DNA from: Ostrea edulis
Taxonomy: Eukaryota
Reading direction: 5' to 3'
DNA: 64,000 nucleotides
NCBI RefSeq assembly: GCF_947568905.1
Contig: NC_079166.1
Coordinates: 54,002,001-54,066,000, forward strand
Part shown: piece by piece, positions 1 to 64,000 of the stretch
Layout of the letters: every line of letters begins with the position of its first letter
How positions within the stretch are numbered: the first letter of the stretch is position 1
Notes under the pieces: model-generated
Told to the model about the DNA's origin: nothing
What the model saw: the letters and a program-made list of their open reading frames with translations, nothing else
The model's database searches: none
Translations under genes and position numbers: made by a program

Positions 1-1053
1 CTGACTTTCATGTATACCTCCTACCCACCATTCTCTATCCAGAGTTCCGTGTGCTACTCGCATTATACGGTGTGAGTGAAACTCGTACAACACGCCCTCT
101 GGTGAGAGAATGCCTACCCACATGTTTCAGAACCAAAACACTGACCCCTGGCACCTCACACAGTATCAGTAATATAGATACATCGTTCATCATGCACTGT
201 GCACTAGACAGTAGTATCAGGGCTCATTGTGGAGTGTTTTGAGGGTTGGGAAAAAGATCAGTGTATTTATTATCTGCATCCTACATACGTCGCTATCTTG
301 CATACACGTGGGTCAGGGTGGGAGTAAAGATTTTTCACACGTGACAACCTTTGCATCTTCATCTATATTTGCAACTCGGACCTCGTCAGCTGCGGGGACT
401 TATAGAAATCGCGAAATGGCATTGTACACTGATATATATACAATAACGTAAATAATCATAGTAACTATAGTATTATATATTATTACTACAGTAACTTGAT
501 CCGAAGAGTCGGATCACGTCGAGTTGACAGGCGCGGATCATCAGATCACACGAGACGCTAGTAGTAATGATAAATTTATTATATACCCCCTTGTGCATTT
601 TAAATCCACATTTATAAGATAATTAATGTAATCCAAATTATAAAAAACACAGACATACCATGAAATTATGTTTTGTATACGCAGGTTCGTTTGTGACGAG
701 TTCAACATTTTCCACAAATAACGTTGCGTTGTTGCATTGTGACGTCATTGTGACGGCATCAGTTTCAGAGGATACTGATACGGAATCGGAAAACCGGATC
801 ACACGCTGTGAAATCCACAGTATCAGAGAACAATACATTGATGGGTATATAATAAATTGAATGATCGGGATGTACTGTAAGTGGGTGTGCCGACCTGTCT
901 GAACTACGTGTCTGTATCAAACATACAAAGCTAAGGTTCACATGGACTTGGGGAGGAAATGGCATAGGCAACACATTGACGAGGAGAGATATTGAAACGA
1001 AATAAAGCTGAAAACCTCATGAAAACATGAAAAGACACAATTTTGAAAATGAT

Positions 1054-1165
1054 GTCTACATTACTAATATCCGAGACGTAATGACGTCTACATTACTAGT
1101 ATCCAAGACGTAATGACGTCTACATTACTAGTATCCGAGACGTAATAACGTCTACAATACTAGTC
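1054..1165. repeat. 32-bp minisatellite, ~3.5 copies (left array)
   Basis: Monomer gtctacattactagtatccgagacgtaatgac with internal inverted repeat CATTAC...GTAATG. Also at 29844-29955 and 58629-58740. Confidence 0.9.
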
Positions 1166-1206
1166 AATCGTAACTACTCGGCTATTTCCGTAACCGCAAA
1201 TGAACT

Positions 1207-1783
1207 TAGTCTCGTGCAACCAGACGCTCTGCTTTTTCCGTAAATATCCGAAGAGCAGAGAGTCTGGTAAAGATACGCGATAACGTTTGTAACGTCAGAT
1301 CGAGGCTTACCAAAATTTCGGTATTTAATTTGATTGGTTGATTCAACACACCTTCAAAATAACGACTACCGAAGAAATTTGTAATATATTGAATTTGCCG
1401 TTTAAGCTTAAGGATTTACAACTAGAGTGGTTATAAAAACTTTTGCAAAAGGAAAGGATTTATGCTGTTCTACCGACGGGAAATGGTAAAACCGTTTTAT
1501 CAAAATTACTTTAGGAGGCAAAAGTGAAAGTACAATTTCCAGCTGACAAAGAGCGTAATTTCTTTTTATTGGACTTATAGTTATGATTTTCCCATTTGTA
1601 TCACTAATGAAGGATCAACTAAATAGCGTCAAATTTCGGAATTGACTGTTTATGTCAGAGAGAATCCAACGGAAACTAAATTAGCGCTCCCTAGCGGTAA
1701 CAGTTATTATCGCGTGTCTTTACCAGACTCTCTGCTCGTCGGAGATTTACGGAGACAGCCGAGTGTCTGGTTGAACGAGACTA
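1207..1783 (+). mobile_element. Non-autonomous AcademH-like DNA transposon with RecQ-helicase remnant
   Basis: 77-bp TIRs (TAGTCTCGTGCAACCAGAC... / ...GTCTGGTTGAACGAGACTA, 8 mismatches). Flanks caaatgaact / caaatgaacc (9-bp perfect, 10-bp near-perfect TSD). Internal frameshifted RecQ-type motifs IYAVLPTGNGKT (1458-1493, motif I) and IVMIFPFVSLMKDQL (1577-1621, motif Ia). Confidence 0.8.
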
Positions 1784-2172
1784 CAAATGAACCTCGTATG
1801 TGGATCGACGCCATCAGAGTTGGTTGCTACGTATACGTAAACGTAACTTTGACGCCACAGTCGTACGTTACACTATGAAACGTGAACTTTCAAAAGCATC
1901 TAAGATATTATACACATCTAAGGTATTGTACCACTATCAATTTCCACTTACATGTTATGTATTAGAGTGAATAAGACGTTAATGATACCAAAACTGAATC
2001 TCTGGTGAAAATATAAATAACATACTAGTCAGGGATTCGGTTCTGGCCTTTTAACACTCATCCACAGGCGCGCTTCCGGCGAAGAAATGCATCAATTTGA
2101 TGCAATTCTTGCGCCGATCTACGTCCGCGTCTTCTTGCCGGTTACGGAAAATGACGAGCGCGTGATCCGATT

Positions 2173-2387
2173 GCATTACTAGTATCCGAGACGTAATGGT
2201 GTCTGCATTACTAGTATCCGAGACGTAATGGTGTCTGCATTACTAGTATCCGAGACGTAATGGCGTCTGCATTACTAGTATCCGAGACGTAATGACGTCT
2301 GCATTACTAGTATCCGAGACGTAATGGTGTCTACATTATTAGTATCCGAGACGTAATGGCGTCTACATTACTAGTATCCGAGACGTA
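2173..2387. repeat. 32-bp minisatellite, ~6.7 copies (right array, same monomer as 1054-1165)
   Basis: Tandem gcattactagtatccgagacgtaatggtgtct units without spacers. Also at 30963-31177 and 59748-59962. Confidence 0.92.
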
Positions 2388-2968
2388 GAAATTTACAGGG
2401 ATGTTTAAGATTTTGAAGATATATGAAAATAATAGTTGTTTGCTTGTCAAGAATAAAGAATTTTAAAGAAGTTAACTTCTACTCCAATGCCCCCCCCCCT
2501 CCACTTTGAAAAAAGGATGCTAGGTGTCTACATGTATTATTATTTTATTTTGGTTTAAATTTCAAAATAGTTGTGATCCTCCCCAACTCCCCAAGGTGGA
2601 GCTACATCTTTGAAAGCATCGCGTATATATCAAAATCTAAGCCGGGGTATTTTTTTATTTTTGATGGTATCCCACCTAGGCTATGATATCTCATTTGTGC
2701 AATGTACCCAACCTGTTCAATAGCTAAAATATTACATATAATGCAAGTAAAGTATCTACCGTGTTTACAGGAAATAATAATTGTGATGGAAAACATGCAC
2801 TGGTGCGATAAAAGTTTATCAACTAGAACTGATGGTGGTTAAGTGGGAGGGAAAACGCTTTCACACTGATAACCTTTTATTTAATTATTATTTTCAGGTG
2901 AAACTTCAAGAATCACTTTGTGGCTAGGATTGACCAGGGAATAAATATACTTCCAGGTAAATTTAGAG

Positions 2969-5900
2969 ATGCCTAGGTGTGGATGTGGCCACCGCTTTCC
3001 CTCTGTAGACTCAGACACAGAGGATGAGGACAGTGATGATGAATACGTGCCATCTTGGATGAAACTTTGGGAACAAAGAGAGAAAAAGTTCATTTCGACA
3101 AGAGCCTTCAAATTGGCAGAGAAAACATTACGAACTTTTAACAAAGTTATCATACAAGGAGAGACTGGATGTGGTAAATCCGCCATTGCTCTAAACATAG
3201 CATTAAAGTATAGGTCTCGGAAGTGGGAGGTTGTAATGGTGAAAAATATCAGAGACATTAAATCTGCTCCTGTGAAAAGAAAATCCGTTCTCTTCATTAT
3301 CAACGATCCGATAGGAAAAACTGCATTGGACGAAAAATCATGTAGACGGTGGTACTTACAGAAGAATTTGCTGAACCGTTATTTTTCGACAAATGGGCAG
3401 AATGAAAAAAAGATCAAAACTCCAAAAGTTATTGTGACTTGCAGGTCGACTCTTACTGAGAAGATTCTTGAATGCTATTTCAGTAAATTCACTGTCATTG
3501 ATATGGACGAAGAGGAGATTAAAATCTGTAAAGAAGAAAAAGAAAAAATTTTAAAGAAGCATATAGATTGTTCAAAACTTACTGAAAGTGATATCAATGA
3601 ATTACTTAAAACTGAAAAAGCATTCCCCTTAATATCTGATATGGCGAATACCTGCAAAATTCTTGAAAGGGATTTACAAGCATTTTACAGAGAACCCTTT
3701 GAAGAAATAAAAAAGGAAATTTTGTCTTTGAAAGACAGTTCAAAAGAAAAGTTTTTATGTCTGTTTCTACTTACCTTGAGTGGAAATCGATTAACGAAAA
3801 GCAGTTTTGAAGAGGAAATACATGATTGTGATGACACAAATAGCATGTACGAGGAGAATAGGATAGTCAATGATGACAGAGAAAATGAAAAGAAAAACAA
3901 TGAGAAAAATAAAGAGGCGTTTACTAACAACTATGATGGTGGTGACAACAAAGATGATGAAAATAAATATGTCAGCGTCAACAGCAATGATGAGGAANNN
4001 NNNNNNNNNNNNNNNNNNNNNNNNNNNNNNNNNNNNNNNNNNNNNNNNNNNNNNNNNNNNNNNNNNNNNNNNNNNNNNNNNNNNNNNNNNNNNNNNNNNN
4101 NNNNNNNNNNNNNNNNNNNNNNNNNNNNNNNNNNNNNNNNNNNNNNNNNNNNNNNNNNNNNNNNNNNNNNNNNNNNNNNNATGATAGAGGACGTATTGGA
4201 AATTTTAAACTTTCCAGAAAACTTTTCTAAAAGAATTCTCTTCGAAAACTTTAAGTATCTCAGGGGTCACTACTTCGTGATGAGAGTGGGTAAAATTTTT
4301 CAAATTACAAACGATTCGTTTTTGCTGGCGTTGACTCATATATTTTGTACACATTTTCCAGAACTATTCTTGAAATACTGTCCAAGTAAATTCTTTCGTA
4401 CTTTGACAACTTGCTCGATTGCAAAAGGGGGAATCTTTCCAAACGTTCAATTACAAGACGCATATATCAATTCATTTGTGGATAGAATTCTGGAAGATAT
4501 AAAGAATGGCACATTTTTGGATGTTTTTCTGAGTCCTTGGATCCGGGATGTGAGAGTCTTGTCCAATCTGCAAATGCGATTCGAAGCAATCCCGTACGAA
4601 GATCTGATACGGGTGACTTTAACATCAAAACTAGATGCTGACCTTACAATTGCAAGCTCGGAAGTACGAAAAAAAATGACTGGCTTGTCTCGACTGGATT
4701 TCATTGCACTAAGTAAGGAAGTATCTCCAATAATTCTGTCACTTATATTAAACCTGAACGATCTTTTCCACACCATGTTCACATTGATCAGAAAGAAGGC
4801 CGAGAATGAAGACAGATCTGAATGCTTCAAGAATGTTCCTTTAATGTGCGCCTGTTGTGTCAATGGACGAGAAGATCTTGCCAGACTAGTCATAGATAAT
4901 GTTGATGACAAACATACATGCTGGAGTAAACAAGAAAATATCTACCCTGTGCACATTGCTGCCAACTTCCTGAACACTGACGTCTTAGGTCTTCTTTTAG
5001 ATGGGGAGTGTGATGTTAACATAACAACACAAAACAAAGAATCGCCTTTTTTCTTGGCATCAGCAGTCGAAAAGTACCATCTCCAAAATATCCACTGGAC
5101 TAGTAGTCAGGCAGTGGGTCATTCCGCAAGAAAATACGAAGAGTTAGTGGAAGAAAACCGTTTAAAGACCCTTACTCTTCTTGAACAGAAAGGTGCAAAT
5201 GTAAACAATCATCCTAGTGAATTACCTTCTGCCCTTGCTTTTTCTTGTCAAAGGGGATATGTCGATACAGTTCAGTTTATGATTAGGAATGGTGCGAATG
5301 TGAAAGAAACTGACGAAGAAAACCTTAATGCGCTACATTTTGCTTCAGAAGTAGGGAATATTGAAATTGTTCAATTGTTGCTGGAGAGTGGTGCAGATAT
5401 AAATCTCAGTACCACAAGAGGCCCGATGCCATTATATTTAGCATCCCTTAATGGACACGTTGATGTAGTAGAGATGTTTCTTTCTAAAGATAGCACCCAA
5501 GAACTAAAAGGGAGATTGATATACAAGCCGTTCTCCGTAGCCTGCAAGCATGGCCATAAAAGGATCGTTGAAAGGCTTTTAGAATATGATAATCGTATAT
5601 TATCTGATGACACTTCATCTTTGTCGACTGCTGTTGGTAATGGGCACAAGGAAATTGTTGAATTGCTTTTGAAAAATGGCGCTGATGCAAATATTTCTAA
5701 AAATGCAAGCAAGATAAGCCCTTTATATTCTGCTGCTGGTTCCGGATATGATGATATTCTTAAATTATTACTGAACAGTGGTGTGAATGTTAACATGGAA
5801 ACAAAAAATGCAAATACGGCTTTGGATATTGCGTCACAGAATGGCCACCGTTTGAACGTTCAGATATTACTAGAAAATGGTGCAAATGTCAATCATTGCA

Positions 5901-7621
5901 CTATACAACAAGCAACTGCATTATTCTATGCGGCAGATAATGGTCACTATGAAATAGTGATGCTACTTCTACGGAAGAAAGCAGATGTGAATATCTGCAC
6001 GAAAAACGGAAACAGTCCCTTGATACGGGCTTCATCTTGTGGATATGAAAATATAGTTCGCGAACTTCTGAGTCATGGGGCTGATGTTAACCAATCCAAT
6101 GTTGCGGGGATAACAGCACTGTATTTGGCGTCTGAAAATGGACATACTGATATTGTAAAACTTCTGTTAGTCAACAAAGCAGATGTCAACTTAGGTAAAA
6201 AAGATGGAAGCACTTCAATGTATATTGCATCTCGATATGGGCATCATGGAATTGTTCAAGAACTGTTAAAACACGGTAAAAATATCAATGGCACGAGCTC
6301 GAAAAACCCTTTGTTAATAGCCTCCTATTTCGGACATTATGACATTGTTGAAATTCTTTTGGGAAACGGGGCGAATGTTAACGTGCAGGATGACGTTGGA
6401 GACACTCCTTTGATAACTGCGTCGAGAAAGGGATGGAGTGGAATCGTGAAAATTCTTCTGAAGTTCGGAGCCGATGTCACACTCTGCAACGAAGAAGATG
6501 ACGAAAATGCTTTACACTACGCATGTTTTCGAGGTCATACAGACGTGGTGAAAATACTACTTGATCATGGAATGGATATTGATGACTATGACGAATACAC
6601 GAACACGCCTTTACAGAAAGCTTTAGAAGGGGAACATCTGATGACTGCATTGTTTTTGTTAGATCATGGCGCAAATGTGAACATTGTAGCATGTGACACA
6701 TCTGCTCTTTATTTAGCATGCGACATCGGATTTAAGGAAGTAGTGGATATTCTTCTAGAGGCCAATGCAGAAGTTAATCCCAAGAACCCCGACGGTTCTT
6801 CTGCATATTCTCCTCTTTTTGCTGCTGTCGGGAATGGTTATTTTCAAATTACCAAAGAACTTTTACGCCATGGGGCTAATATCATCGATACGAAAAAATT
6901 TGGTGGGGAAACCTTGCTAGTAAAGGCCATTGAGTCTCGAAATTCTGGGATAGCAAAGCTTCTCATCGAACATGGAGCTAACGTCAACGAACAAGATGAA
7001 CGTGGAAACACAGCTCTGCATGCAAGCGCTTATTATACTGACACCCTAGATTGCATGACAGTTCTATTGAACAACAATGCCAATCCAAATGTTTCCAACT
7101 GTGACGGAATTACTCCAATGTTGATGGCACTGGAAACACGACCCGAGAAAAGGGATCGAATTCAGGCTCTCGTTGATCATGGAGCTAATATTAATGCTCG
7201 AGATAATTCTGGATATTTTGCACTGCAGTCGGCTTGTATATTCCCTGATCAAGATAATGTTGTTGCATATCTACTGAAAAATGGCGCCAATATCAATGCA
7301 CGTAATGGAAATGGAGAAACTGCTCTCTATGCAGCATCCAACACTGGCTATCTTCGGAATGTGAAAACACTCCTTCAGTATGGGGCAGACATTAATCTTT
7401 GTTCAAAAACTGGACTTAGTCCACTTGATATTGCGACGAAATTAGGAAACACAAAACTGAAAAAGTTTCTTCAGAAAAAAATACACGAGGGGAAAAATAA
7501 CAGTATTTCTGATTCACAGAGAGAGATTGTCGTGGCCAAGCAGAGTTCGGTAGCAACAGCTCTTCCAAGGAGAAGAAACTTTGCAAAGCTAACAAAGACA
7601 TTGCGCCAAAAGAGATTTTAG
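2969..7621 (+). CDS. Paralogue A, copy 1: nSTAND3-like P-loop NTPase plus ~26 ankyrin repeats (NLR/STAND-like), 1550 aa
   Basis: Uninterrupted ORF. F-x-x-T-R-A motif, then VIIQGETGCGKS (Walker A, 3158-3181), VLFIINDPIGK (Walker B-like, from 3287) and KVIVTCR, matching the nSTAND3 pattern by eye. About 26 ankyrin repeats counted (e.g. LHFASEVGNIEIVQLLLESGADIN). 183 N at 3998-4180 keep the frame. The 5' end is uncertain: AG acceptor-like sites at 2897 and 2956. Confidence 0.85.
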   Translation: MPRCGCGHRFPSVDSDTEDEDSDDEYVPSWMKLWEQREKKFISTRAFKLAEKTLRTFNKVIIQGETGCGKSAIALNIALKYRSRKWEVVMVKNIRDIKSAPVKRKSVLFIINDPIGKTALDEKSCRRWYLQKNLLNRYFSTNGQNEKKIKTPKVIVTCRSTLTEKILECYFSKFTVIDMDEEEIKICKEEKEKILKKHIDCSKLTESDINELLKTEKAFPLISDMANTCKILERDLQAFYREPFEEIKKEILSLKDSSKEKFLCLFLLTLSGNRLTKSSFEEEIHDCDDTNSMYEENRIVNDDRENEKKNNEKNKEAFTNNYDGGDNKDDENKYVSVNSNDEEXXXXXXXXXXXXXXXXXXXXXXXXXXXXXXXXXXXXXXXXXXXXXXXXXXXXXXXXXXXXXMIEDVLEILNFPENFSKRILFENFKYLRGHYFVMRVGKIFQITNDSFLLALTHIFCTHFPELFLKYCPSKFFRTLTTCSIAKGGIFPNVQLQDAYINSFVDRILEDIKNGTFLDVFLSPWIRDVRVLSNLQMRFEAIPYEDLIRVTLTSKLDADLTIASSEVRKKMTGLSRLDFIALSKEVSPIILSLILNLNDLFHTMFTLIRKKAENEDRSECFKNVPLMCACCVNGREDLARLVIDNVDDKHTCWSKQENIYPVHIAANFLNTDVLGLLLDGECDVNITTQNKESPFFLASAVEKYHLQNIHWTSSQAVGHSARKYEELVEENRLKTLTLLEQKGANVNNHPSELPSALAFSCQRGYVDTVQFMIRNGANVKETDEENLNALHFASEVGNIEIVQLLLESGADINLSTTRGPMPLYLASLNGHVDVVEMFLSKDSTQELKGRLIYKPFSVACKHGHKRIVERLLEYDNRILSDDTSSLSTAVGNGHKEIVELLLKNGADANISKNASKISPLYSAAGSGYDDILKLLLNSGVNVNMETKNANTALDIASQNGHRLNVQILLENGANVNHCTIQQATALFYAADNGHYEIVMLLLRKKADVNICTKNGNSPLIRASSCGYENIVRELLSHGADVNQSNVAGITALYLASENGHTDIVKLLLVNKADVNLGKKDGSTSMYIASRYGHHGIVQELLKHGKNINGTSSKNPLLIASYFGHYDIVEILLGNGANVNVQDDVGDTPLITASRKGWSGIVKILLKFGADVTLCNEEDDENALHYACFRGHTDVVKILLDHGMDIDDYDEYTNTPLQKALEGEHLMTALFLLDHGANVNIVACDTSALYLACDIGFKEVVDILLEANAEVNPKNPDGSSAYSPLFAAVGNGYFQITKELLRHGANIIDTKKFGGETLLVKAIESRNSGIAKLLIEHGANVNEQDERGNTALHASAYYTDTLDCMTVLLNNNANPNVSNCDGITPMLMALETRPEKRDRIQALVDHGANINARDNSGYFALQSACIFPDQDNVVAYLLKNGANINARNGNGETALYAASNTGYLRNVKTLLQYGADINLCSKTGLSPLDIATKLGNTKLKKFLQKKIHEGKNNSISDSQREIVVAKQSSVATALPRRRNFAKLTKTLRQKRF
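3998..4180. other. Run of 183 N inside an acidic/Asn-rich insert of paralogue A
   Basis: Same flanks (gatgaggaa|N|atgatagagg) in all three copies. Lengths are 183, 171 and 180, all multiples of 3. Confidence 0.95.
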
Positions 7622-7926
7622 TGATATTCTCTCCTTTTGAATACTGTGTGACAGATTTTAGTGATATTCTCTCCTCTAGAATACTGTGCGACAGATTTTA
7701 GTGTTATTCTCTCCTTTTGAATACCGTGCGACAGATTTTAGTGATATTCTCTCCTTTTGAATACTGAGCGACAGATTTTAGTGATATTCTCTCTTTTTGT
7801 ATAATGTGCGACAGATTTTAGTGATATTCTCTCCTTTTGAATACTGAGCGACAGATTTTAGTGATATTCTCTCTTTTTGAATACTATGCGACATATTTTA
7901 GTGATGTTATCTCCTTTTGAATACTG
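7611..7926. repeat. 40-bp minisatellite, 8 copies, starting across the stop codon of paralogue A
   Basis: Monomer acagattttagtgatattctctccttttgaatactgtgcg. The first unit supplies AGA TTT TAG. Also at 36391-36706. Confidence 0.93.
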
Positions 7927-9295
7927 AATTGTTTTGGCCTCAACCAAACACATTTTGTTAATTCAAAATTTTGATTGATTTCATTGGTTTTAGTTTTTCA
8001 AAGTCATAGCAGATAAATGATATGTTTCTGTTGTTTTGTAAACGTGCACTTTAAAATAATCATGAACTACCACCAATCTGGTTGATTTTATTGAATATCT
8101 ATTGATCAGTTTATTAAATAAATCATTTTCTTCTCCCTTCATATCTGTATGTACTAGCACCCACCAAAACAGATTGCACAACTAATGAAACAATGGGCAT
8201 ATTGATTTTCTTCTTCAGAATTATGATTGATTTCATTGATTTATTATTGGTTTTAGTTTTTCAAAGTTGTAGAAATAAAATGATATATGTACATTAGAAT
8301 AAACATGAACTACATGTACTACCAATCTGATTGATTTTTATTGATTATCTATTGATTAATTTATTGACAAAATTTGCTTTTCCCTTCCTAACTTATGTAC
8401 TAGTACACCAAAAAGTATACTGATGAAATGATTGATTTATTAATATTTTTGTGTTCAATAGAATTCAATTTGATATCAATTTACATATCATAAAAGTGTT
8501 ACAATTGTGTTGTCATTATAATGAATTCGATTTTAAGAGCAGCGCACATTCAGAACAGAGCACGTGGTCTTAATGTTTTCAATGTGCAGATACCACACAT
8601 TTAGTGTCACTTGTTTAATTTCAAAATCAAAATAAGCACAGAGAAATGTTTGCTAGCATAATGATAATAGCCAATAAAACTAATGATTTTAGATTTGTAT
8701 TTTAGTGTTCATTTATCTATACGTAGAATGAACAATGTAGATTAAAACGGATATGATGTATTATAAATATTTCTTTTTTGATTTCATAATTAAGTTTCAA
8801 TACTCATTGCAAAAGTGACAAGTTCCCATGCTATGAAGACCTGGCCTGTCAGAATAAAGGGAATATCTATCACCATATTAAAGGATGGTGATGGAAACTT
8901 TTGCTGAAGTTGGAAATTCCGTTATACAGAAACAATGGAGCAGTCACTGTGATTAATATGATGTATGTACATTACAATTTTCTTATGCATGATATGTATT
9001 TTGAAATGCATCACTATTATTATGATGTATGCATCATATGAAATGGAAAAATGAATTTTTCTCATCTTTCTGATGTATGGTATGCATTATGATTGTTATG
9101 ATGTATGTTTGCATTATGAAATAAGTATTTTAAATAAAAGATTTTTAAAAAACCCACTTCACCTTGCCTCCCCCTTTATTGAAAGCAATGTTACGTTACA
9201 TACCCGATTATATTTATATCATCATATGGTTTCATCGTGCTTTTACAAAAGCCTATTGGTATCATGTAAAAAAAAAAAAATTCACATTCCATTAC

Positions 9296-9368
9296 CTCGT
9301 AATTACGAGATCTCGTAATTACGGGATAATTATCTCGAAATTACGAGAAAAGATCTCGTAATTACGAG
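9296..9368. repeat. Short array of the palindrome ctcgtaattacgag
   Basis: About four degenerate copies (ctcgtaattacgagatctcgtaattacgg...tctcgaaattacgagaaaagatctcgtaattacgag). Also at 38076-38148. Confidence 0.75.
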
Positions 9369-10229
9369 AAAATATTGACATATAGCCGAGTTGAACAACT
9401 TATTGATAGTCTTGGACACGTTTGACACTATTTCCCTCTTTGTTGATTGGTCAGCAAATCGAAATGATCTTATTCAAAGTGTGTGTGACGGTACATATTG
9501 TCGTCCGGTGTTGCATGATTTAGGAACGCTAAATACATACCTATAATTCTCGTTCCGGGTTATCACTAACGTTCAAGTTAAGTTCTATAATATGTAAATG
9601 TAAATTTATTTTAATATACCAATAGGCTTTGGTATGCTTTTCTTCCCAAGTGTCTGTTATTTATTTATTTATCTTTACAGATTACTCTTGAAAGTTTTGG
9701 TATTAATAATACCATATCTTGGACAGAATTAAGCACCAAATACTGGATATAGGTCTATACTCCTCCTCCCCCTTCCCACCTCTTCAATTTAACGATATTC
9801 TAAAATGTGTACGTTCTTCGTAAAATCGAATAAACTAAACTTTGTTATTACAAGAGATATGATACAACCTTAAAACTCAGCCCATAATAAAGATTTTGAT
9901 ACCGTTAGCTTTACAATACCCTATTTATTACTTTTATTTTATCTGTTCAAATCTTAGGACCCCAACGGTAAGCACACATCCTACTTCCAGTAACTGCAAA
10001 AATGAAGGTCATTGATCCTTTAAACATGAATAAATTGATAATATCTGGTTATTCTAGTTTAAACAATGTTTTATTCAGAAATAAGTTGATATTCATGATT
10101 ACAAACTATATATTATGTATTATAAAAGATAGCGAAACAAGTCAGAAGACTTTTATTAATCTCACTCTCACTCTCAACATGTTACAAGTGAGAGGTCAAT
10201 GAAATTTCTAAGTATAATGTTTATATCAC

Positions 10230-10231
<2 letters not shown>

Positions 10232-10280
<49 letters not shown>
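10232..10280. repeat. (GA)n microsatellite
   Basis: Pure GA run, 4 nt shorter in copy 2 (39012-39056). Confidence 0.95.
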
Positions 10281-10287
<7 letters not shown>

Positions 10288-10736: not shown

Positions 10737-10841
10737 CTATTTTTGGTCCTATGTGGAAAAAATAATTCCTTATGTTCACCTGGAAGGTCTATTTTTGGTC
10801 CTATGTGGAAATAATAATTCCTTCTGTTCACCTGGAAGGTC
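10737..10841. repeat. 2 x 52-bp tandem duplication
   Basis: ctatttttggtcctatgtggaaa...gttcacctggaaggt repeated with a 52-bp period. Confidence 0.8.
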
Positions 10842-52760: not shown

Positions 52761-55700
52761 TGCACTTCTGTCGTCTTCAATTTTTTATATCGAACATTGA
52801 ATTGATTTAATGGTATTCTATGTCCATCTTGAAAAACCTGCACAATCATTGATTGGTTTAAAAGAGACGCCAGAATACATTAGACTGGTTCATAAGTGAA
52901 TAATTTTTTAATTCATAACATATAGTGTTTATGAATTGTTTTATAAATTTATATTTTGTATAGATTCTTTCTCACAATATTATACTACATATGAATGATA
53001 CCGTTTTTGAAAATTTTTCTCTCAACAGGGGATAATTATGTCGCAATTTCTATGGTCTTTATACAGATCTAGTTCGTCAATACAGCCTATCTTCGGGTCA
53101 AATGCTGTCTGACGTGTTTCATACCGATTGTGAGACCGTTCTTGGTACACTGATTAAATTAACTTTAATCATTAATTACGGATTATCCCGTTTGGGTGTG
53201 ACCGGTCGACAGAGGATACTTACTCCTTCTAGGCACTTGATCCCACATCTGTTGTGTCCAGGGGCCCGTGTTTACCCAACTCTCTAATTTGAATTGTTTA
53301 TAATTTCTTAATTTTGTATTCTTTATAAGAATTAAGAGATTTGTCACTGTTCGTTATCTTCACTTTTTCTTTAATCATATTTGGTTAGAGTTACAACTTT
53401 GGTTGGAAAAAATGCATTTGAATCAGAAACGTAATTGAAGCCCTAGACATTTCAAACAATATTCTATCGTGAAGCGATATGGACCGTATTATTATTTAAA
53501 GTATACAAATTACTTTAATGTAGCTAAATTAGTTTTTTATCCACTTTCCCATAACTACATGCTTGAAAACATTTGCATGAAAAAGAAAAAAGTGAGAAGA
53601 TTATTCAAAAAGCAAATACAGTGGAAACCCATTCATTCATTTGCCACTCGACAAGATGTTAGGCACCTATAAATAGCCTCATGCACATGAGGGGAGTCCC
53701 AATATAAAGTATATAACTCAGACGAAACTATTCAAATCTAGGTTTGAAAGAGTGACTTACGACATGGTACTGTAGTAACAAAATACACAGGTTTACACAG
53801 GTAGAATCACCGATGATCCTCTGAAATGGACACGTGACTGTAACTGGACTCATCTTCTGAATTTGCAATTACAAATGGCCCTTTGACAGTTGTTTGTGAG
53901 CAGTGATTAAAACCTAAATAATTCTGGTTTTAAGATGTGGAATAATCTATGACATATGGAATATTATCATAAATACATATGTGCGCAAATTTAACAGTGT
54001 TTTTACAAAGTGGACAAAATTTGTCGAAATTCGGACCATACAACTTGAACTAAAACTGTACTCTTCTTCTATTTTTCGTATCCTTGTGTACGTTTCGGAA
54101 TTTGCCAGTACATGCGGATATGTAATAGCCGTTATAACTGTGGCCAAATGGTGAAAGTGATGGGAAAAAGATAACAGATATCAAATAAATGAAATAAATC
54201 TATTTTCAAAAACAAGTATAAGTTAAAGTGAGACAATACACTAGTATGTTGTAGAACTATCAACATCCATGTAAAATAGATTAGAGCACTATTAAATGTT
54301 TTTATCACTTTAACCTCGATGTTCATCTGAAATATTTTCCTTAACATCATTTTCTCCTTAATATAGCCATGGACTTTTTCAGGCAGTTGCAAATGATGAA
54401 ATATATATGTTCCAGATCCCTGGATGATCGTGATCACTTTGTACATATTTAATTCTGCCTGGCCTCGTGTTAACGACAATTCCTAATACATGTAACCGTT
54501 TACGCGGTCCACTCATCCAAACAATGTTTTCTGCGCATTTAGTGAAAATAATTCAATACTGGAAGGAAAACGGTGAAATGACTGCAATATATACAGTAAT
54601 TATTTTTTCTTCGAAAACTTTCCTCTCCTTGGAGTACAGTCTGTACTTTGATTAAATCTAGATATCCACTTGAGTGAGTTTTGACTCAATTCTTCACGAT
54701 GTATTCATTATAACAACTAGATGAAAATCACAACCTAACAATATTGCATAGAGGAAGGAGTTTTTTAATGCACGTGAATTGAATGAACGCTATCTTTATT
54801 TCAAATGAATTGAAGAACAAATTTTGAATAATTGCGTGCATTAGGCCTAATTATGTTATATTGATTGATATCATATGGAAGTCACTTGGGGCTACAAATT
54901 AAACGTTCCTTGTGTAATATAAATGATCTCTTTCCGTATTGAAAATTAGATAATGATTTTGCGAATGCAATTGTAATCCGTCATGCCATTAAATGACCAA
55001 CGGTCGTTCAAATTTCAAAATTTAGACTCAGTATTGCGAATGTATTTATGATGGTAGTTTTTATCCAATGCTACAATTTAAGAGCAAGATTATGAATACA
55101 CATCGTTTCTTCTCGTCAAACGCGATAATCGAAATCGAAAACATAATGCACTATATGAATGCAGGGGCGGATACAAGAATTTTTGAAAGGGCGTTTCTAC
55201 CTTAATTTTGGTTTTCAAACGGGGGGGGGGGGGGTTTCAACCCTCAAAATGCGTAATTTAAAAAAGAAAACTCCCCCTTTTTAAAGCTAAAACCGGAACT
55301 CTCCTATGGATCCGCAACATGTGAGATATTTACATATATTAAGTATCTCACAAGTGGTCATCTTAAAAGCTTACAGAAAGTAGAAATTAACTATTCAGAA
55401 CGACTTGTGAGGGTGACCGATGGGGAAATAACATATTTTTTGATAATTATTGGTTCTGTATAAAAACAATTTCATTCTAGAATGAGGGTATGTACATAAG
55501 ATATATACAAGCTATCCACACTTCAAGTGCCTGTGGATAAATATGGGCCTAGTCAGAACTATCATAAGTATAACACAACATCTACACAATTTTTGTTGAT
55601 CATGTTGAAAACTAATCGCAACTTCTCAGTTTGACGGAAAGGGCAGAGAATGTGTGATTGGTTGTATGATGTTGCCTCGCTTCGTTCTGGAAATTTCCAT

Positions 55701-56199
55701 AAGGCTGATTCAAAACTGAAATCACGGATTAAAGCAACGAACAGGTATCTTCAACAATTATCAAAACTTCTATCTTCTAAAAGATCAAAATCAAGCATCG
55801 ATAAACAACGAAGAGAAAAGAAAACTCGCTTGGATCCGCCACTTTACTCTCATTTTTGCTATTTCGGGGTAGTTTGCAAAAGTAGGTTTTTAATAAATTT
55901 TACGAACCAATTTACTAACCAATTTACTAACCAATTAAAATTTTATTATAGTTTACAGACTTCATCTCACATATGAAACAATATTATGTAACTGTGGAGT
56001 AAGCGTTTCGGAGTACATTGGCAAAATGTGTTAATTCAGAAGTATAAATACATGTGTGTTTTAATGACTGACATTTTCTCAGATTGTAAGTTATGGATCC
56101 GAGGTCTTCTTTTTTGATTAATGCAATCATTTCATTCCCAAAGGAAATGAACAAATCGATGCGATATTGATCTTTATCGGGAGCTAATTATATAATCAT

Positions 56200-56268
<69 letters not shown>

Positions 56269-58781
56269 TCATTGTGTATTTTGCGAGGTTTTTCCTATAC
56301 GTAATATTCTGTCTTTTTTAAGTATCTCTGGACGAATTTTAAAATAGAGTTGTAGCGCAATATACATGTATATAAAGCAGTGTTCAACAAAGAATAATGT
56401 ACTCTGGGTTTTTTTTAATTCGTGTTGCTTCCTCTAAGCATTAAGCATCGCTTGTTAATGCATATTATCTATAAAATATATACGGTACCCATTCTTAACC
56501 GTTTCTATCATTCGTAATGCCATAACAATAGCATAATGAATGTTAAGCATAACTAAGTAGTTACCGGACACTCTTTCGTCTCCACTGTAACGTGGTAACT
56601 AATCTGTAACGTACATAATCACTTACCAATCATTGAAAACAAACTCTCAATTCACACTATATATAAAGTCCGATAGATTAAGTTTAAGCTGGGTTAATAC
56701 CACTAGTATATAACGATCTTTGTACAGCGCACGTATTACGACACATAGCACTGCTAATAACATCTTAACCTTTTTCTGTAAAAGTTCCTTTCAATATGAT
56801 ATCATTTCTCCTAGGCAGACTTCTTCACAAGTAAACATCATCAGCATTTTTTTTCTGAGATCTCCAGATAACGTTGCACACACTGCACTATTGATAACGT
56901 TTATTATGACCCGGGATAGGTTTATAGTATTTTTAATTTTGTGCATGTCTTTTTTTATTTTGTAAAATATTCTAAGGAGTGGGTTTTTTTGTTTGTGAGG
57001 TTTTTTTTTTGGGGGGGGGGGGTTGTTTGTTTGTTTGGTTTTGTTTTGTTTTGTTTTTTTTGGTTTTGTTGTTGTTGTTGTTGTTTTTTTCCTTCACAGC
57101 CAGTAGGTGCTCTCAGGTAGAAGGGGACAGTTTCGCACTAAAACTATAGGCCCGATCAACTTCCTTATACGAAGGAAATGCACCATATTTAAAGTAATAT
57201 TACAAATGTGTAAAAATGTATAGAATAATCTTAGGATACATGTCAAATGTAGCTGAGTGCTTAATGAAAATGTTGATATGCAACATGTAGGTGTCACCAT
57301 GATTCCTATATATATATATGGGTGTAAATACGAAACCAAGACCGTGTCTAAATCCCCTCGCTCAGTACCGTGATGGTATGTGGGTGGTGCGGATTAGCTC
57401 AAATGAGAGAAAATCAAAGCGAGAAAGAGGTACCTGCTCAGAACATGTTTAGTGCACCAGCGCCAGTATGTATAAATTACATGTAATTTAGGATCATGAT
57501 TTATTAACTATACCAATATGAATTACAACTATTGACATAAAAGGGAACTATGATTTTTCATTATTCTGTCATAATCTGACTTTCATGTATACCTCCTACC
57601 CACCATTCTCTATCCAGAGTTCCGTGTGCTACTCGCATTATACGGTGTGAGTGAAACTCGTACAACACGCCCTCTGGTGAGAGAATGCCTACCCACATGT
57701 TTCAGAACCAAAACACTGACCCCTGGCACCTCACACAGTATCAGTAATATAGATACATCGTTCATCATGCACTGTGCACTAGACAGTAGTATCAGGGCTC
57801 ATTGTGGAGTGTTTTGAGGGTTGGGAAAAAGATCAGTGTATTTATTATCTGCATCCTACATACGTCGCTATCTTGCATACACGTGGGTCAGGGTGGGAGT
57901 AAAGATTTTTCACACGTGACAACCTTTGCATCTTCATCTATATTTGCAACTCGGACCTCGTCAGCTGCGGGGACTTATAGAAATCGCGAAATGGCATTGT
58001 ACACTGATATATATACAATAACGTAAATAATCATAGTAACTATAGTATTATATATTATTACTACAGTAACTTGATCCGAAGAGTCGGATCACGTCGAGTT
58101 GACAGGCGCGGATCATCAGATCACACGAGACGCTAGTAGTAATGATAAATTTATTATATACCCCCTTGTGCATTTTAAATCCACATTTATAAGATAATTA
58201 ATGTAATCCAAATTATAAAAAACACAGACATACCATGAAATTATGTTTTGTATACGCAGGTTCGTTTGTGACGAGTTCAACATTTTCCACAAATAACGTT
58301 GCGTTGTTGCATTGTGACGTCATTGTGACGGCATCAGTTTCAGAGGATACTGATACGGAATCGGAAAACCGGATCACACGCTGTGAAATCCACAGTATCA
58401 GAGAACAATACATTGATGGGTATATAATAAATTGAATGATCGGGATGTACTGTAAGTGGGTGTGCCGACCTGTCTGAACTACGTGTCTGTATCAAACATA
58501 CAAAGCTAAGGTTCACATGGACTTGGGGAGGAAATGGCATAGGCAACACATTGACGAGGAGAGATATTGAAACGAAATAAAGCTGAAAACCTCATGAAAA
58601 CATGAAAAGACACAATTTTGAAAATGATGTCTACATTACTAATATCCGAGACGTAATGACGTCTACATTACTAGTATCCAAGACGTAATGACGTCTACAT
58701 TACTAGTATCCGAGACGTAATAACGTCTACAATACTAGTCAATCGTAACTACTCGGCTATTTCCGTAACCGCAAATGAACT

Positions 58782-59358
58782 TAGTCTCGTGCAACCAGAC
58801 GCTCTGCTTTTTCCGTAAATATCCGAAGAGCAGAGAGTCTGGTAAAGATACGCGATAACGTTTGTAACGTCAGATCGAGGCTTACCAAAATTTCGGTATT
58901 TAATTTGATTGGTTGATTCAACACACCTTCAAAATAACGACTACCGAAGAAATTTGTAATATATTGAATTTGCCGTTTAAGCTTAAGGATTTACAACTAG
59001 AGTGGTTATAAAAACTTTTGCAAAAGGAAAGGATTTATGCTGTTCTACCGACGGGAAATGGTAAAACCGTTTTATCAAAATTACTTTAGGAGGCAAAAGT
59101 GAAAGTACAATTTCCAGCTGACAAAGAGCGTAATTTCTTTTTATTGGACTTATAGTTATGATTTTCCCATTTGTATCACTAATGAAGGATCAACTAAATA
59201 GCGTCAAATTTCGGAATTGACTGTTTATGTCAGAGAGAATCCAACGGAAACTAAATTAGCGCTCCCTAGCGGTAACAGTTATTATCGCGTGTCTTTACCA
59301 GACTCTCTGCTCGTCGGAGATTTACGGAGACAGCCGAGTGTCTGGTTGAACGAGACTA
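58782..59358 (+). mobile_element. AcademH-like relic, copy 3
   Basis: Same TIRs, TSD and RecQ motifs as 1207-1783. Confidence 0.8.
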
Positions 59359-60546
59359 CAAATGAACCTCGTATGTGGATCGACGCCATCAGAGTTGGTT
59401 GCTACGTATACGTAAACGTAACTTTGACGCCACAGTCGTACGTTACACTATGAAACGTGAACTTTCAAAAGCATCTAAGATATTATACACATCTAAGGTA
59501 TTGTACCACTATCAATTTCCACTTACATGTTATGTATTAGAGTGAATAAGACGTTAATGATACCAAAACTGAATCTCTGGTGAAAATATAAATAACATAC
59601 TAGTCAGGGATTCGGTTCTGGCCTTTTAACACTCATCCACGGGCGCGCTTCCGGCGAAGAAATGCATCAATTTGATGCAATTCTTGCGCCGATCTACGTC
59701 CGCGTCTTCTTGCCGGTTACGGAAAATGACGAGCGCGTGATCCGATTGCATTATTAGTATCCGAGACGTAATGGTGTCTGCATTACTAGTATCCGAGACG
59801 TAATGGTGTCTGCATTACTAGTATCCGAGACGTAATGGCGTCTGCATTACTAGTATCCGAGACGTAATGACGTCTGCATTACTAGTATCCGAGACGTAAT
59901 GGTGTCTACATTATTAGTATCCGAGACGTAATGGCGTCTACATTACTAGTATCCGAGACGTAGAAATTTACAGGGATGTTTAAGATTTTGAAGATATATG
60001 AAAATAATAGTTGTTTGCTTGTCAAGAATAAAGAATTTTAAAGAAGTTAACTTCTACTCCAATGCCCCCCCCCCCTCCACTTTGAAAAAAGGATGCTAGG
60101 TGTCTACATGTATTATTATTTTATTTTGGTTTAAATTTCAAAATAGTTGTGATCCTCCCCAACTCCCCAAGGTGGAGCTACATCTTTGAAAGCATCGCGT
60201 ATATATCAAAATCTAAGCCGGGGTATTTTTTTTTATTTTTGATGGTATCCCACCTAGGCTATGATATCTCATTTGTGCAATGTACCCAACCTGTTCAATA
60301 GCTAAAATATTACATATAATGCAAGTAAAGTATCTACCGTGTTTACAGGAAATAATAATTGTGATGGAAAACATGCACTGGTGCGATAAAAGTTTATCAA
60401 CTAGAACTGATGGTGGTTAAGTGGGAGGGAAAACGCTTTCACACTGATAACCTTTTATTTAATTATTATTTTCAGGTGAAACTTCAAGAATCACTTTGTG
60501 GCTAGGATTGACCAGGGAATAAATATACTTCCAGGTAAATTTAGAG

Positions 60547-63500
60547 ATGCCTAGGTGTGGATGTGGCCACCGCTTTCCCTCTGTAGACTCAGACACAGAG
60601 GATGAGGACAGTGATGATGAATACGTGCCATCTTGGATGAAACTTTGGGAACAAAGAGAGAAAAAGTTCATTTCGACAAGAGCCTTCAAATTGGCAGAGA
60701 AAACATTACGAACTTTTAACAAAGTTATCATACAAGGAGAGACTGGATGTGGTAAATCCGCCATTGCTCTAAACATAGCATTAAAGTATAGGTCTCGGAA
60801 GTGGGAGGTTGTAATGGTGAAAAATATCAGAGACATTAAATCTGCTCCTGTGAAAAGAAAATCCGTTCTCTTCATTATCAACGATCCGATAGGAAAAACT
60901 GCATTGGACGAAAAATCATGTAGACGGTGGTACTTACAGAAGAATTTGCTGAACCGTTATTTTTCGACAAATGGGCAGAATGAAAAAAAGATCAAAACTC
61001 CAAAAGTTATTGTGACTTGCAGGTCGACTCTTACTGAGAAGATTCTTGAATGCTATTTCAGTAAATTCACTGTCATTGATATGGACGAAGAGGAGATTAA
61101 AATCTGTAAAGAAGAAAAAGAAAAAATTTTAAAGAAGCATATAGATTGTTCAAAACTTACTGAAAGTGATATCAATGAATTACTTAAAACTGAAAAAGCA
61201 TTCCCCTTAATATCTGATATGGCGAATACCTGCAAAATTCTTGAAAGGGATTTACAAGCATTTTACAGAGAACCCTTTGAAGAAATAAAAAAGGAAATTT
61301 TGTCTTTGAAAGACAGTTCAAAAGAAAAGTTTTTATGTCTGTTTCTACTTACCTTGAGTGGAAATCGATTAACGAAAAGCAGTTTTGAAGAGGAAATACA
61401 TGATTGTGATGACACAAATAGCATGTACGAGGAGAATAGGATAGTCAATGATGACAGAGAAAATGAAAAGAAAAACAATGAGAAAAATAAAGAGGCGTTT
61501 ACTAACAACTATGATGGTGGTGACAACAAAGATGATGAAAATAAATATGTCAGCGTCAACAGCAATGATGAGGAANNNNNNNNNNNNNNNNNNNNNNNNN
61601 NNNNNNNNNNNNNNNNNNNNNNNNNNNNNNNNNNNNNNNNNNNNNNNNNNNNNNNNNNNNNNNNNNNNNNNNNNNNNNNNNNNNNNNNNNNNNNNNNNNN
61701 NNNNNNNNNNNNNNNNNNNNNNNNNNNNNNNNNNNNNNNNNNNNNNNNNNNNNNNATGATAGAGGACGTATTGGAAATTTTAAACTTTCCAGAAAACTTT
61801 TCTAAAAGAATTCTCTTCGAAAACTTTAAGTATCTCAGGGGTCACTACTTCGTGATGAGAGTGGGTAAAATTTTTCAAATTACAAACGATTCGTTTTTGC
61901 TGGCGTTGACTCATATATTTTGTACACATTTTCCAGAACTATTCTTGAAATACTGTCCAAGTAAATTCTTTCGTACTTTGACAACTTGCTCGATTGCAAA
62001 AGGGGGAATCTTTCCAAACGTTCAATTACAAGACGCATATATCAATTCATTTGTGGATAGAATTCTGGAAGATATAAAGAATGGCACATTTTTGGATGTT
62101 TTTCTGAGTCCTTGGATCCGGGATGTGAGAGTCTTGTCCAATCTGCAAATGCGATTCGAAGCAATCCCGTACGAAGATCTGATACGGGTGACTTTAACAT
62201 CAAAACTAGATGCTGACCTTACAATTGCAAGCTCGGAAGTACGAAAAAAAATGACTGGCTTGTCTCGACTGGATTTCATTGCACTAAGTAAGGAAGTATC
62301 TCCAATAATTCTGTCACTTATATTAAACCTGAACGATCTTTTCCACACCATGTTCACATTGATCAGAAAGAAGGCCGAGAATGAAGACAGATCTGAATGC
62401 TTCAAGAATGTTCCTTTAATGTGCGCCTGTTGTGTCAATGGACGAGAAGATCTTGCCAGACTAGTCATAGATAATGTTGATGACAAACATACATGCTGGA
62501 GTAAACGAGAAAATATCTACCCTGTGCACATTGCTGCCAACTTCCTGAACACTGACGTCTTAGGTCTTCTTTTAGATGGGGAGTGTGATGTTAACATAAC
62601 AACACAAAACAAAGAATCGCCTTTTTTCTTGGCATCAGCAGTCGAAAAGTGTCGAAAAGTACCATCTCCAAAATATCCACTGGACTAGTAGTCAGGCAGT
62701 GGGTCATTCCGCAAGAAAATACGAAGAGTTAGTGGAAGAAAACCGTTTAAAGACCCTTACTCTTCTTGAACAGAAAGGTGCAAATGTAAACAATCATCCT
62801 AGTGAATTACCTTCTGCCCTTGCTTTTTCTTGTCAAAGGGGATATGTCGATACAGTTCAGTTTATGATTAGGAATGGTGCGAATGTGAAAGAAACTGACG
62901 AAGAAAACCTTAATGCGCTACATTTTGCTTCAGAAGTAGGGAATATTGAAATTGTTCAATTGTTGCTGGAGAGTGGTGCAGATATAAATCTCAGTACCAC
63001 AAGAGGCCCGATGCCGTTATATTTAGCATCCCTTAATGGACACGTTGATGTAGTAGAGATGTTTCTTTCTAAAGATAGCACCCAAGAACTAAAAGGGAGA
63101 TTGATATACAATCCGTTCTCCGTAGCCTGCAAGCATGGCCATAAAAGGATCGTTGAAAGGCTTTTAGAATATGATAATCGTATATTATCTGATGACACTT
63201 CATCTTTGTCGACTGCTGTTGGTAATGGGCACAAGGAAATTGTTGAATTGCTTTTGAAAAATGGAGCTGATGCAAATATTTCTAAAAATGCAAGCAAGAT
63301 AAGCCCTTTATATTCTGCTGCTGGTTCCGGATATGATGATATTCTTAAATTATTACTGAACAGTGGTGTGAATGTTAACATGGAAACAAAAAATGCAAAT
63401 ACGGCTTTGGATATTGCGTCACAGAATGGCCACCGTTTGAACGTTCAGATATTACTAGAAAATGGTGCAAATGTCAATCATTGCACTATACAACAAGCAA

Positions 63501-64000
63501 CTGCATTATTCTATGCGGCAGATAATGGTCACTATGAAATAGTGATGCTACTTCTACGGAAGAAAGCAGATGTGAATATCTGCACGAAAAACGGAAACAG
63601 TCCCTTGATACGGGCTTCATCTTGTGGATATGAAAATATAGTTCGCGAACTTCTGAGTCATGGGGCTGATGTTAACCAATCCAATGTTGCGGGGATAACA
63701 GCACTGTATTTGGCGTCTGAAAATGGACATACTGATATTGTAAAACTTCTGTTAGTCAACAAAGCAGATGTCAACTTAGGTAAAAAAGATGGAAGCACTT
63801 CAATGTATATTGCATCTCGATATGGGCATCATGGAATTGTTCAAGAACTGTTAAAACACGGTAAAAATATCAATGGCACGAGCTCGAAAAACCCTTTGTT
63901 AATAGCCTCCTATTTCGGACATTATGACATTGTTGAAATTCTTTTGGGAAACGGGGCGAATGTTAACGTGCAGGATGACGTTGGAGACACTCCTTTGATA
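60547..64000 (+). pseudogene. Paralogue A, copy 3: frameshifted by a 10-bp tandem duplication; runs off the window
   Basis: gtcgaaaagt is duplicated at 62641-62660, giving a stop at 62688 (713 aa). The downstream ankyrin sequence continues out of frame to 64000. 180-N run at 61576-61755. Confidence 0.85.

What the first reader, a model, noticed from the sequence alone, without database searches (positions are those of the whole stretch)
1..64000. Near-identical ~28.8-kb tandem macro-array amplifying an nSTAND3-ankyrin gene pair
Seen: at least 2.2 head-to-tail copies with periods 28790 and 28785, each holding one A gene, one broken B gene and the same TE relics. All TE insertions and both B frameshifts are shared, so they predate the amplification. 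Copy-private SNPs, microsatellite lengths and the copy-3 frameshift postdate it. Inference: a very recent, probably still polymorphic, copy-number expansion of a putative immune-sensor cassette, superimposed on an older A/B tandem duplication (two nested rounds). The unit junction cannot be located from this window.
Basis: partly seen in the sequence, partly recalled or inferred. Interest (0 to 1): 0.75.

Follow-up and report, generated by a model that had tools for sequence, protein, structure and literature searches.

The report
Young three-copy oyster gene-cluster duplication
A 28.5-kb piece of flat-oyster chromosome carrying one working and one dead copy of a putative immune-sensor gene sits three times head to tail; the join shows it arose by a DNA-copying slip, and such young duplications are already known to be very common in this species.

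Summary
With 80 kb of flanks fetched, the array is exactly three copies, X1-J-X2-J-X3. It spans 86,031 bp, from 17.4 kb before the window to 4.6 kb after it, lies in unique flanks, and has no further copy in the assembly.

The unit junction does lie inside the window, at 11022-11355 and 39798-40131. It consists of a 4-bp microhomology, then a 330-bp copy of a segment lying 22.6 kb back inside the unit, then a blunt join. This points to replication template switching for the first duplication. The two junctions are identical, so an unequal exchange probably added the third copy.

- **Divergence:** copies differ at 0.04-0.08% of sites, and X3 is the oldest lineage.
- **Gene content:** each copy holds a single-exon nSTAND3-ankyrin gene A and a paralogue B that was already dead, with two shared frameshifts.
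- **A3:** a private 10-bp tandem duplication breaks it, so only two A genes look intact.
- **Older paralogue:** a third, intact paralogue lies just upstream of the array.

Pervasive polymorphic duplications are already described in Ostrea edulis. The scan notes another macro-array in this genome, and I found a second on C6. This is an ordinary case that is now well resolved.

The parts
1..11021 (+). Tail of copy X1. X1 starts 17,438 bp before the window, at G000:C3:53984563.
   Evidence: X1 is 28,460 bp and aligns end to end with X2 and X3.
11022..11355 (+). Junction piece J1. It is a 334-bp copy of unit 17188-17521. Its first 4 bp (AAAC) are microhomology shared with the right flank.
   Evidence: One search shows the sequence occurs only five times in the genome, all inside this array.
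11356..39797 (+). Copy X2, 28,442 bp.
39798..40131 (+). Junction piece J2. It is identical to J1, flanks included.
40132..64000 (+). Copy X3. It runs on to window 68592-68596, where unique right flank begins.
17188..17521 (+). Internal source segment of J in X2. The same segment is at 45954-46287 in X3 and 11,613 bp before the window in X1.
   Evidence: all copies are 100% identical.
2969..7621 (+). Gene A1. It is a single open frame of 1550 codons, 61 of them masked: nSTAND3 NTPase, helical region, then about 21-25 ankyrin repeats.
   Evidence: (nSTAND3 at 83.8 bits against a cut-off of 27.2; Ank_2 E = 7e-142).
3998..4180 (.). N run in A1. Its counterparts are 32790-32960 in A2 and 61576-61755 in A3.
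   Evidence: The frame is kept across each run. Not filled.
31761..36401 (+). Gene A2, an open frame of 1546 codons. It differs from A1 by L410S and I877T.
60547..64000 (+). Gene A3, frameshifted. The first frame ends at 62685. The rest of the ankyrin array reads in another frame as far as window 65203.
62641..62660 (+). Private 10-bp tandem duplication (GTCGAAAAGT, twice) at codon 699 of A3, just before the first ankyrin repeat.
19474..23994 (+). Pseudogene B2, with frameshifts near 19760 and near 22018-22027. B3 is at 48240-52760. B1 lies before the window and carries one extra private 1-bp insertion.
11356..16015 (+). 5'-truncated Penelope-like element fragment (11356-11660 plus 14916-16015, with a GIY-YIG frame at 14990-15727). 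A nested 3.25-kb insertion at 11661-14915 splits it, with target duplication ATTA.
7613..7926 (+). 40-bp minisatellite (7.8 copies) that starts at the stop codon of A1. It is shared by all copies.

Best explanation
This is a real germline tandem triplication of a 28.5-kb segment on chromosome 3 of the flat oyster assembly.

**Step 1 (inferred from the junction).** A replication fork or broken end leaving the right end of X re-primed on a 4-bp match (AAAC) 22.6 kb behind it. It copied 330 bp, then jumped a further 6.2 kb back to the start of X without microhomology and carried on. This produced X-J-X. That is the FoSTeS/MMBIR type of template switching. The landing point is 12 bp from the centre of a head-to-head pair of Penelope-like elements, an inverted repeat that may have stalled the fork.

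**Step 2 (inferred).** Unequal exchange between the two 28.5-kb copies added a third copy together with an exact copy of the junction.

**Cargo.** The segment carries a single-exon nSTAND3-ankyrin gene A and its already dead paralogue B. A is a STAND-type ATPase switch with an ankyrin sensor array and no recognisable effector domain. By analogy with NLR and Avs proteins it would bind a ligand through its repeats and oligomerise through the NTPase.

**Outcome.** The amplification looks neutral or nearly so. One of the three A copies has since been cut in two by a 10-bp slippage duplication.
For: **Array shape and uniqueness**
- Three integer copies with identical junctions, lying in unique flanks.
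- J is not a transposon. It has five occurrences genome-wide, all in the array and all 100% identical.
- No extra copies or leftover haplotigs exist anywhere in the assembly.

**Junction**
- AAAC is shared by the right flank and the source of J. The other join is blunt.
- Full Penelope-like copies align to the minus strand at -19892..-17449 and to the plus strand from -17450. The left breakpoint is at -17438.

**Order of events**
- Private SNPs number 5 in X1, 7 in X2 and 16 in X3. X1 and X2 are therefore the youngest pair and X3 the oldest lineage, which fits two steps.

**Gene content**
- Both B frameshifts are shared by all three copies.
- A3 carries a private 10-bp duplication.
- The Walker A lysine and the Walker B aspartate are invariant across 21 paralogues.
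- The predicted model matches AAA+/STAND folds, including NLRP3, ZAR1, Dark and EfAvs5.

**Species context**
- Polymorphic segmental duplications are pervasive in this species.
Against: - Copy number therefore rests on one hifiasm contig, and the unit is probably longer than most of its HiFi reads (read lengths not checked).
- Only one of the two joins has microhomology.
- The middle copy shows no clear two-block chimeric pattern, which an unequal crossover in mid-unit would leave. The exchange point would have to lie near the left end, or the third copy arose some other way.
- The inverted-repeat trigger is an inference from proximity alone.
- Function, expression and ligand of gene A are unknown. 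The fold search does not separate STAND from other AAA+ ATPases (TM-scores 0.3-0.4).
- 57-61 codons of each A copy are unreadable.
Confidence: 0.7

Rival explanations
1. Assembly artefact. The true haplotype would have one or two copies, and the assembler stacked haplotypes or over-expanded the repeat into three.
For: - No read evidence could be obtained.
- The unit is 28.5 kb and distinguishing variants come only about one per 1-2 kb.
- The genome note reports 33 haplotypic duplications removed during curation, and says the assembly is not fully phased.
Against: - The chimeric junction (end of X, then an internal 330 bp, then the start of X) cannot be invented by an assembler, so at least two tandem copies are real.
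- Three distinct copies cannot come from stacking two single-copy haplotypes.
- Divergence is 0.04-0.08%. From general knowledge, not measured here, allelic divergence in oysters is far higher.
- No true scaffold gap lies at any unit boundary.
- No spare copies sit on unplaced scaffolds.
Confidence: 0.12
2. Adaptive dosage amplification. Selection for more copies of an immune sensor would have driven and now maintain the array.
For: - The gene has the NLR/Avs-like layout.
- The locus is a cluster of ankyrin-armed putative defence genes: paralogue C and a cGAS-like ankyrin gene noted earlier.
- The family is expanded, with at least 38 loci.
Against: - One of the three A copies is already frameshifted and all B copies are dead.
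- Changes within A run 4 non-synonymous to 2 synonymous, as expected without selection.
- Most of the 28.5 kb is TE relics and dead DNA.
- Polymorphic duplications in this species are spread over all gene classes and are mostly rare.
Confidence: 0.1
3. Recombination between flanking direct repeats or transposon copies (NAHR) made the first duplication.
For: The unit is rich in Penelope-like and other repeats.
Against: - No direct repeat brackets X.
- J is absent from both outer ends of the array and from the rest of the genome.
- The left and right flanks share nothing with X except the inverted Penelope-like copy.
Confidence: 0.03

Closest known systems
Replication-based complex tandem duplications and triplications (FoSTeS/MMBIR), as described at human disease loci such as PLP1 and MECP2 (from my own knowledge, not read here)
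   Same: Head-to-tail copies, microhomology at a breakpoint, a templated insertion copied from nearby sequence, and an inverted repeat close to a breakpoint.
   Different: - The insertion is long (330 bp) and one join is blunt.
- The organism is an oyster.
- The mechanism is inferred from one junction only.
Polymorphic segmental duplications in Ostrea edulis (Colston-Nepali, Lapegue and Bierne, bioRxiv 10.1101/2025.06.24.661118)
   Same: Same species. That study describes young duplicated segments whose paralogous variants look like SNPs, and reports that they usually segregate at low frequency.
   Different: That study infers duplications from depth and allele ratios without locating the copies. 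Here one case is resolved to the base, but it was not genotyped in any population.
Bacterial Avs5 (SIR2-nSTAND3-TPR) anti-phage sensors, and PADLOC candidate system PDC-S73
   Same: - The NTPase belongs to the same Pfam family (PF20720) and is followed by a helical repeat array.
- PDC-S73 matches at E = 9e-16.
- EfAvs5 is among the fold matches.
   Different: - There is no SIR2 or any other effector domain ahead of the NTPase.
- The repeats are ankyrin rather than TPR.
- This is an animal gene, and its function is untested.
Plant and animal NLR gene clusters with tandem copy-number variation
   Same: A STAND ATPase with a repeat sensor, arranged in tandem paralogue clusters that mix live and dead copies and carry very young duplicates.
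   Different: The NTPase is nSTAND3, not NB-ARC or NACHT (NACHT scores only 19 bits, below its cut-off). There are no LRRs and no CARD, PYD or TIR domain.

Membership tests
Recent tandem segmental duplication | Head-to-tail copies longer than 1 kb at over 90% identity. | tested here: met
   Three copies of 28.5 kb at 99.8-99.9% identity.
Recent tandem segmental duplication | A novel unit-to-unit junction, with single-copy flanks at both ends. | tested here: met
   Junctions are at 11022-11355 and 39798-40131. The flanks are unique.
Copy-number polymorphism | Copy number differs among individuals or between haplotypes. | not testable with these tools
FoSTeS/MMBIR product | Microhomology at the breakpoints. 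| tested here: inconclusive
   There are 4 bp (AAAC) at the join from the end of X into J, and 0 bp at the join from J into the start of X.
FoSTeS/MMBIR product | A templated insertion copied from nearby sequence. | tested here: met
   The 330-334-bp piece is identical to unit 17188-17521 and found nowhere else in the genome.
NAHR-mediated duplication | Direct repeats bracketing the duplicated segment. | tested here: not met
Pfam nSTAND3 (PF20720) | Score above the curated cut-off. | tested here: met
   83.8 bits against a cut-off of 27.2, covering profile positions 1-153 of 155.
STAND / NLR-like sensor | Intact Walker A and Walker B motifs. | tested here: met
   GETGCGKS at residues 64-71 and D113. 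G64, G67, G69, K70 and D113 are invariant in 21 paralogues.
STAND / NLR-like sensor | A nucleotide-binding domain followed by helical and winged-helix arm domains. | tested here: inconclusive
   The model scores pLDDT 72.5, with an alpha/beta core and a helical lid up to residue 280. Residues 282-343 are low confidence and the next 61 residues are masked. Matches are to AAA+ and STAND proteins alike.
STAND / NLR-like sensor | A C-terminal repeat array. | tested here: met
   About 21-25 ankyrin repeats.
STAND / NLR-like sensor | An N-terminal effector or adaptor domain. | tested here: not met
   Only 40 acidic residues precede the NTPase, and no long open frame lies upstream (those short ORFs were not domain-scanned).
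Avs5 | An N-terminal SIR2 effector. | tested here: not met
Penelope-like retroelement (the repeat at the left breakpoint) | A GIY-YIG endonuclease frame and high copy number, with longer copies that carry an upstream frame. | tested here: met
   GIY-YIG at E = 1e-5. There are over 2,600 candidate loci, and frames reach 840 aa. The reverse-transcriptase domain itself was not scored.

The most novel reading that the evidence does not exclude
Head-to-head Penelope-like element pairs act as fork barriers that seed macro-duplications in oysters. This array would then be a segregating copy-number variant of a defence-gene cluster whose copy number, and whose sensor-less A3 product, affect resistance to oyster pathogens.
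Probability: 0.08. Interest if true: 0.6.

Novelty: new member of a known kind. Interest (0 to 1): 0.3.

Why it matters
It gives a base-level worked example of how the many young duplications of oyster genomes arise. It also gives outward-facing junction sequences that would make this copy-number variant easy to genotype. It warns that paralogous differences here would be called as SNPs in population data. The gene family is a plausible but untested animal counterpart of bacterial Avs5-type sensors. As a class of event it is expected in this species and not surprising.

Tried and rejected
**Reads.** As a result depth, junction-spanning reads, polymorphism and expression were all left untested.

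**Rejected readings**
- J as a transposon: rejected, because it has only five copies and all are in the array.
- The 1-kb 'spacer' left of the array as unique DNA: rejected, because it is the upstream part of a longer minus-strand Penelope-like copy.
- An unequal crossover in mid-unit: I looked for a two-block chimeric pattern in X2 and found none.

**Searches that gave little**
- PDB searches with the single sequence and with the profile gave only generic P-loop hits, midasin being the best at 5e-10.
- The bacterial promoter scan upstream of gene A is irrelevant for an animal gene.

**Not run**
- The large protein searches were not run, because Pfam had already settled the family and no claim here rests on absence of relatives.
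- The N runs were neither filled nor looked up. The homologous stretch of paralogue B was not used to infer them.
Full report
**What is there.** The window is G000:C3:54002001-54066000 of an 894,786,893-base assembly in 52 pieces. That size and scaffold count match the published Ostrea edulis assembly xbOstEdul1.1, which was built with hifiasm from 38-fold HiFi reads and scaffolded with YaHS into 658 contigs and 52 scaffolds. An earlier scan note also calls the genome an oyster. Self-comparison confirms head-to-tail copies with periods near 28.79 kb at 99.8-99.9% identity, and an internal older paralogy at 78-80%.

**The N runs, tested first.** The runs are 183, 171 and 180 letters long. Each is a multiple of three. 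Each lies at exactly the homologous place in gene A of each copy, and the open frame is the same before and after in all three copies. With about 600 true gaps in 895 Mb, three gaps at homologous codons inside 64 kb are very unlikely to be scaffold gaps, so I read them as withheld letters. Continuity cannot be proven. I did not fill them or look them up, and I did not use paralogue B to infer them. Paralogue C, which has no N, carries the same architecture in one uninterrupted 1394-codon frame.

**Extent of the array.** I fetched 40 kb on each side. The repeat starts at window -17438 and ends at 68592-68596. It is exactly X1-J-X2-J-X3, with X copies of 28460, 28442 and 28461 bp plus two 334-bp J pieces, 86,031 bp in all. 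The right flank shares nothing with X, and the left flank shares only an inverted retroelement copy. Intergenic unit DNA and the gene A N-terminus each occur only three times in the assembly, all of them here. No copies are left on unplaced scaffolds.

**The junction.** J (window 11022-11355 and 39798-40131) is 100% identical to an internal segment of X (unit 17188-17521). It occurs nowhere else in the genome, so its five occurrences are three sources and two junctions. It is therefore not a transposon.
- At the first join, the end of X is followed by AAAC both in the true right flank and at the start of the source segment. This is a 4-bp microhomology.
- At the second join, J abuts the start of X without any shared base.
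- The two junctions are identical, flanks included. The second was therefore copied from the first and not made afresh.

This anatomy is the signature of replication-based template switching, with two backward switches of 22.6 kb and 6.2 kb. A homology-driven gain of a third copy followed. Recombination between flanking repeats is excluded, because no repeat brackets X.

**The left breakpoint.** The GIY-YIG frame at 14990-15727 belongs to a Penelope-like retroelement family with thousands of loci, and many of those sit as head-to-head pairs. Two long genomic copies of that family were aligned to the left flank.
- They match the minus strand continuously from -19892 to -17449.
- They match the plus strand from -17450 to -17134 and again at unit 14915-15992.

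So a longer minus-strand copy meets a 5'-truncated plus-strand fragment head to head at -17450/-17449. The duplication breakpoint at -17438 lies 12 bp inside the plus fragment. The arms of this inverted repeat are 305-317 bp long at 98.4% identity and about 1 kb apart. That this inverted repeat stalled replication is my inference from proximity only. The plus fragment carries a nested 3.25-kb insertion (11661-14915) with target duplication ATTA. The minus copy preserves the empty site.

**Order and age of events.** The three copies differ by 28 SNPs and 20 indel events, and most of the indels are in microsatellites.
- Private SNPs number 5 in X1, 7 in X2 and 16 in X3.
- Pairwise divergence is 0.042% for X1-X2, 0.074% for X1-X3 and 0.081% for X2-X3.

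X3 is thus the oldest lineage and X1/X2 the youngest pair. This fits two steps, with the second at roughly half the age of the first. X2 shows no clean two-block mosaic, so any unequal exchange happened near the left end of the unit. The relative chronology is:
1. Paralogue C splits from A/B (35% protein identity in the NTPase).
2. A and B split (dS 0.52-0.70, dN/dS 0.29-0.37, homology confined to the coding region).
3. The Penelope-like pair forms (1.3-1.6% divergence between arms).
4. The 3.25-kb insertion lands in the plus fragment.
5. The segment duplicates.
6. The segment triplicates.
7. A3 acquires its frameshift.

Gene conversion between copies could make the recent steps look younger than they are.

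**The genes.** A is one open frame of 1550 codons.
- *Layout.* About 40 acidic residues come first, then nSTAND3 (83.8 bits against a cut-off of 27.2), then a helical region, the masked stretch, and about 21-25 ankyrin repeats.
- *Motifs.* Walker A (GETGCGKS at residues 64-71) and the Walker B aspartate D113 are invariant in an alignment of 21 paralogues from this genome.
- *Fold.* A model built on that alignment scores pLDDT 72.5. It shows an alpha/beta NTPase core with a helical lid. It matches AAA+ and STAND proteins alike, including NLRP3, ZAR1, Dark and EfAvs5, at low TM-scores. The fold is therefore consistent with STAND but not diagnostic.
- *Sequence searches.* Searches against solved structures gave only generic P-loop hits. 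PADLOC matches candidate defence system PDC-S73 at 9e-16.
- *Known relatives.* nSTAND3 is the NTPase of bacterial Avs5 sensors, where it follows a SIR2 effector. No effector domain is present here, and no long open frame lies upstream.
- *Gene states.* B has two frameshifts shared by all three copies, and B1 has one more private 1-bp insertion. A3 carries a private 10-bp tandem duplication at 62641-62660, at codon 699. This separates the NTPase part from the whole ankyrin array.
- *Variation in A.* Differences within A are L410S and I877T in A2, and Q655R, K853N and two silent changes in A3. This gives no sign of selection.

The array thus adds one apparently intact A gene, one fresh pseudogene and two more dead B copies.

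**How ordinary it is.** The family has at least 38 loci in this genome, and bivalves are known for lineage-specific expansions of such proteins. A recent preprint on O. edulis reports pervasive polymorphic duplications. [quoted passage not shown] The scan's own notes list another macro-array in this genome. From evenly spaced retroelement hits I found and confirmed a second array on C6. That one has a 33.4-kb period and more than three copies at 99.5-99.8% identity, plus an older partial copy at 97.9%. The event class is therefore expected here. What this report adds is the exact anatomy.

**What could not be done.** Read depth, junction-spanning reads, copy number in other individuals and expression all remain untested. 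At least two tandem copies must be real, because the chimeric junction cannot be an assembler's invention. The count of three rests on the assembly alone.

Noticed in passing
L030-L046 (G000:C6:82230001-82400000): A second young macro-array. The period is about 33.4 kb, with more than three copies at 99.5-99.8% identity from about 82,260,800 to 82,370,050. An older partial copy at 97.9% lies on its left. Only one open frame over 200 aa falls in a unit.
   Followed up: partly
L002:5067-9248 (window -24933 to -20752, + strand): A third, intact nSTAND3-ankyrin paralogue C. It has a 1394-codon frame and 35% identity to A in the NTPase, and lies just upstream of the array. An ankyrin-fused cGAS-like gene noted earlier lies a further 5 kb upstream.
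   Followed up: partly
G000, genome-wide (table): The Penelope-like family has over 2,600 candidate loci. Many sit as head-to-head pairs 1-4 kb apart, for example C7:80617223(-)/80618266(+) and C3:1313743(-)/1314928(+). Identical-score hits at wide regular spacing on C10 (5.48, 5.70 and 5.96 Mb) and on C3 (32.20 and 32.39 Mb) hint at further large duplications.
   Followed up: no
window 3998-4180, 32790-32960, 61576-61755: The masked runs differ in length by 3, 9 and 12 letters between copies. If the lengths are true, they are in-frame length differences private to each copy, in a linker that the model predicts to be disordered (residues 282-343 have pLDDT below 50).
   Followed up: no
window 1048-1164 and 2172-2387; 7613-7926: Two related 32-bp tandem arrays lie 0.6 kb and 1.8 kb upstream of the A start codon. 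A 40-bp minisatellite begins at the A stop codon. All are present in every copy.
   Followed up: no
window 11661-14915: A 3.25-kb insertion with a 4-bp target duplication (ATTA) and no terminal repeats. It holds a 235-codon minus-strand frame (13913-14617) with no Pfam match. Its element type is unknown.
   Followed up: partly
G000:C7:86390000-86762000: A cluster of at least six nSTAND3 paralogues within 0.37 Mb on C7. Most other family members are also on C7.
   Followed up: no
window 24000-28700: Two adjacent repeat pieces, at about 25950-26490 and 26765-27270, recur together at dozens of loci at 65-87% identity. This is a dispersed transposon relic shared by all three copies.
   Followed up: no
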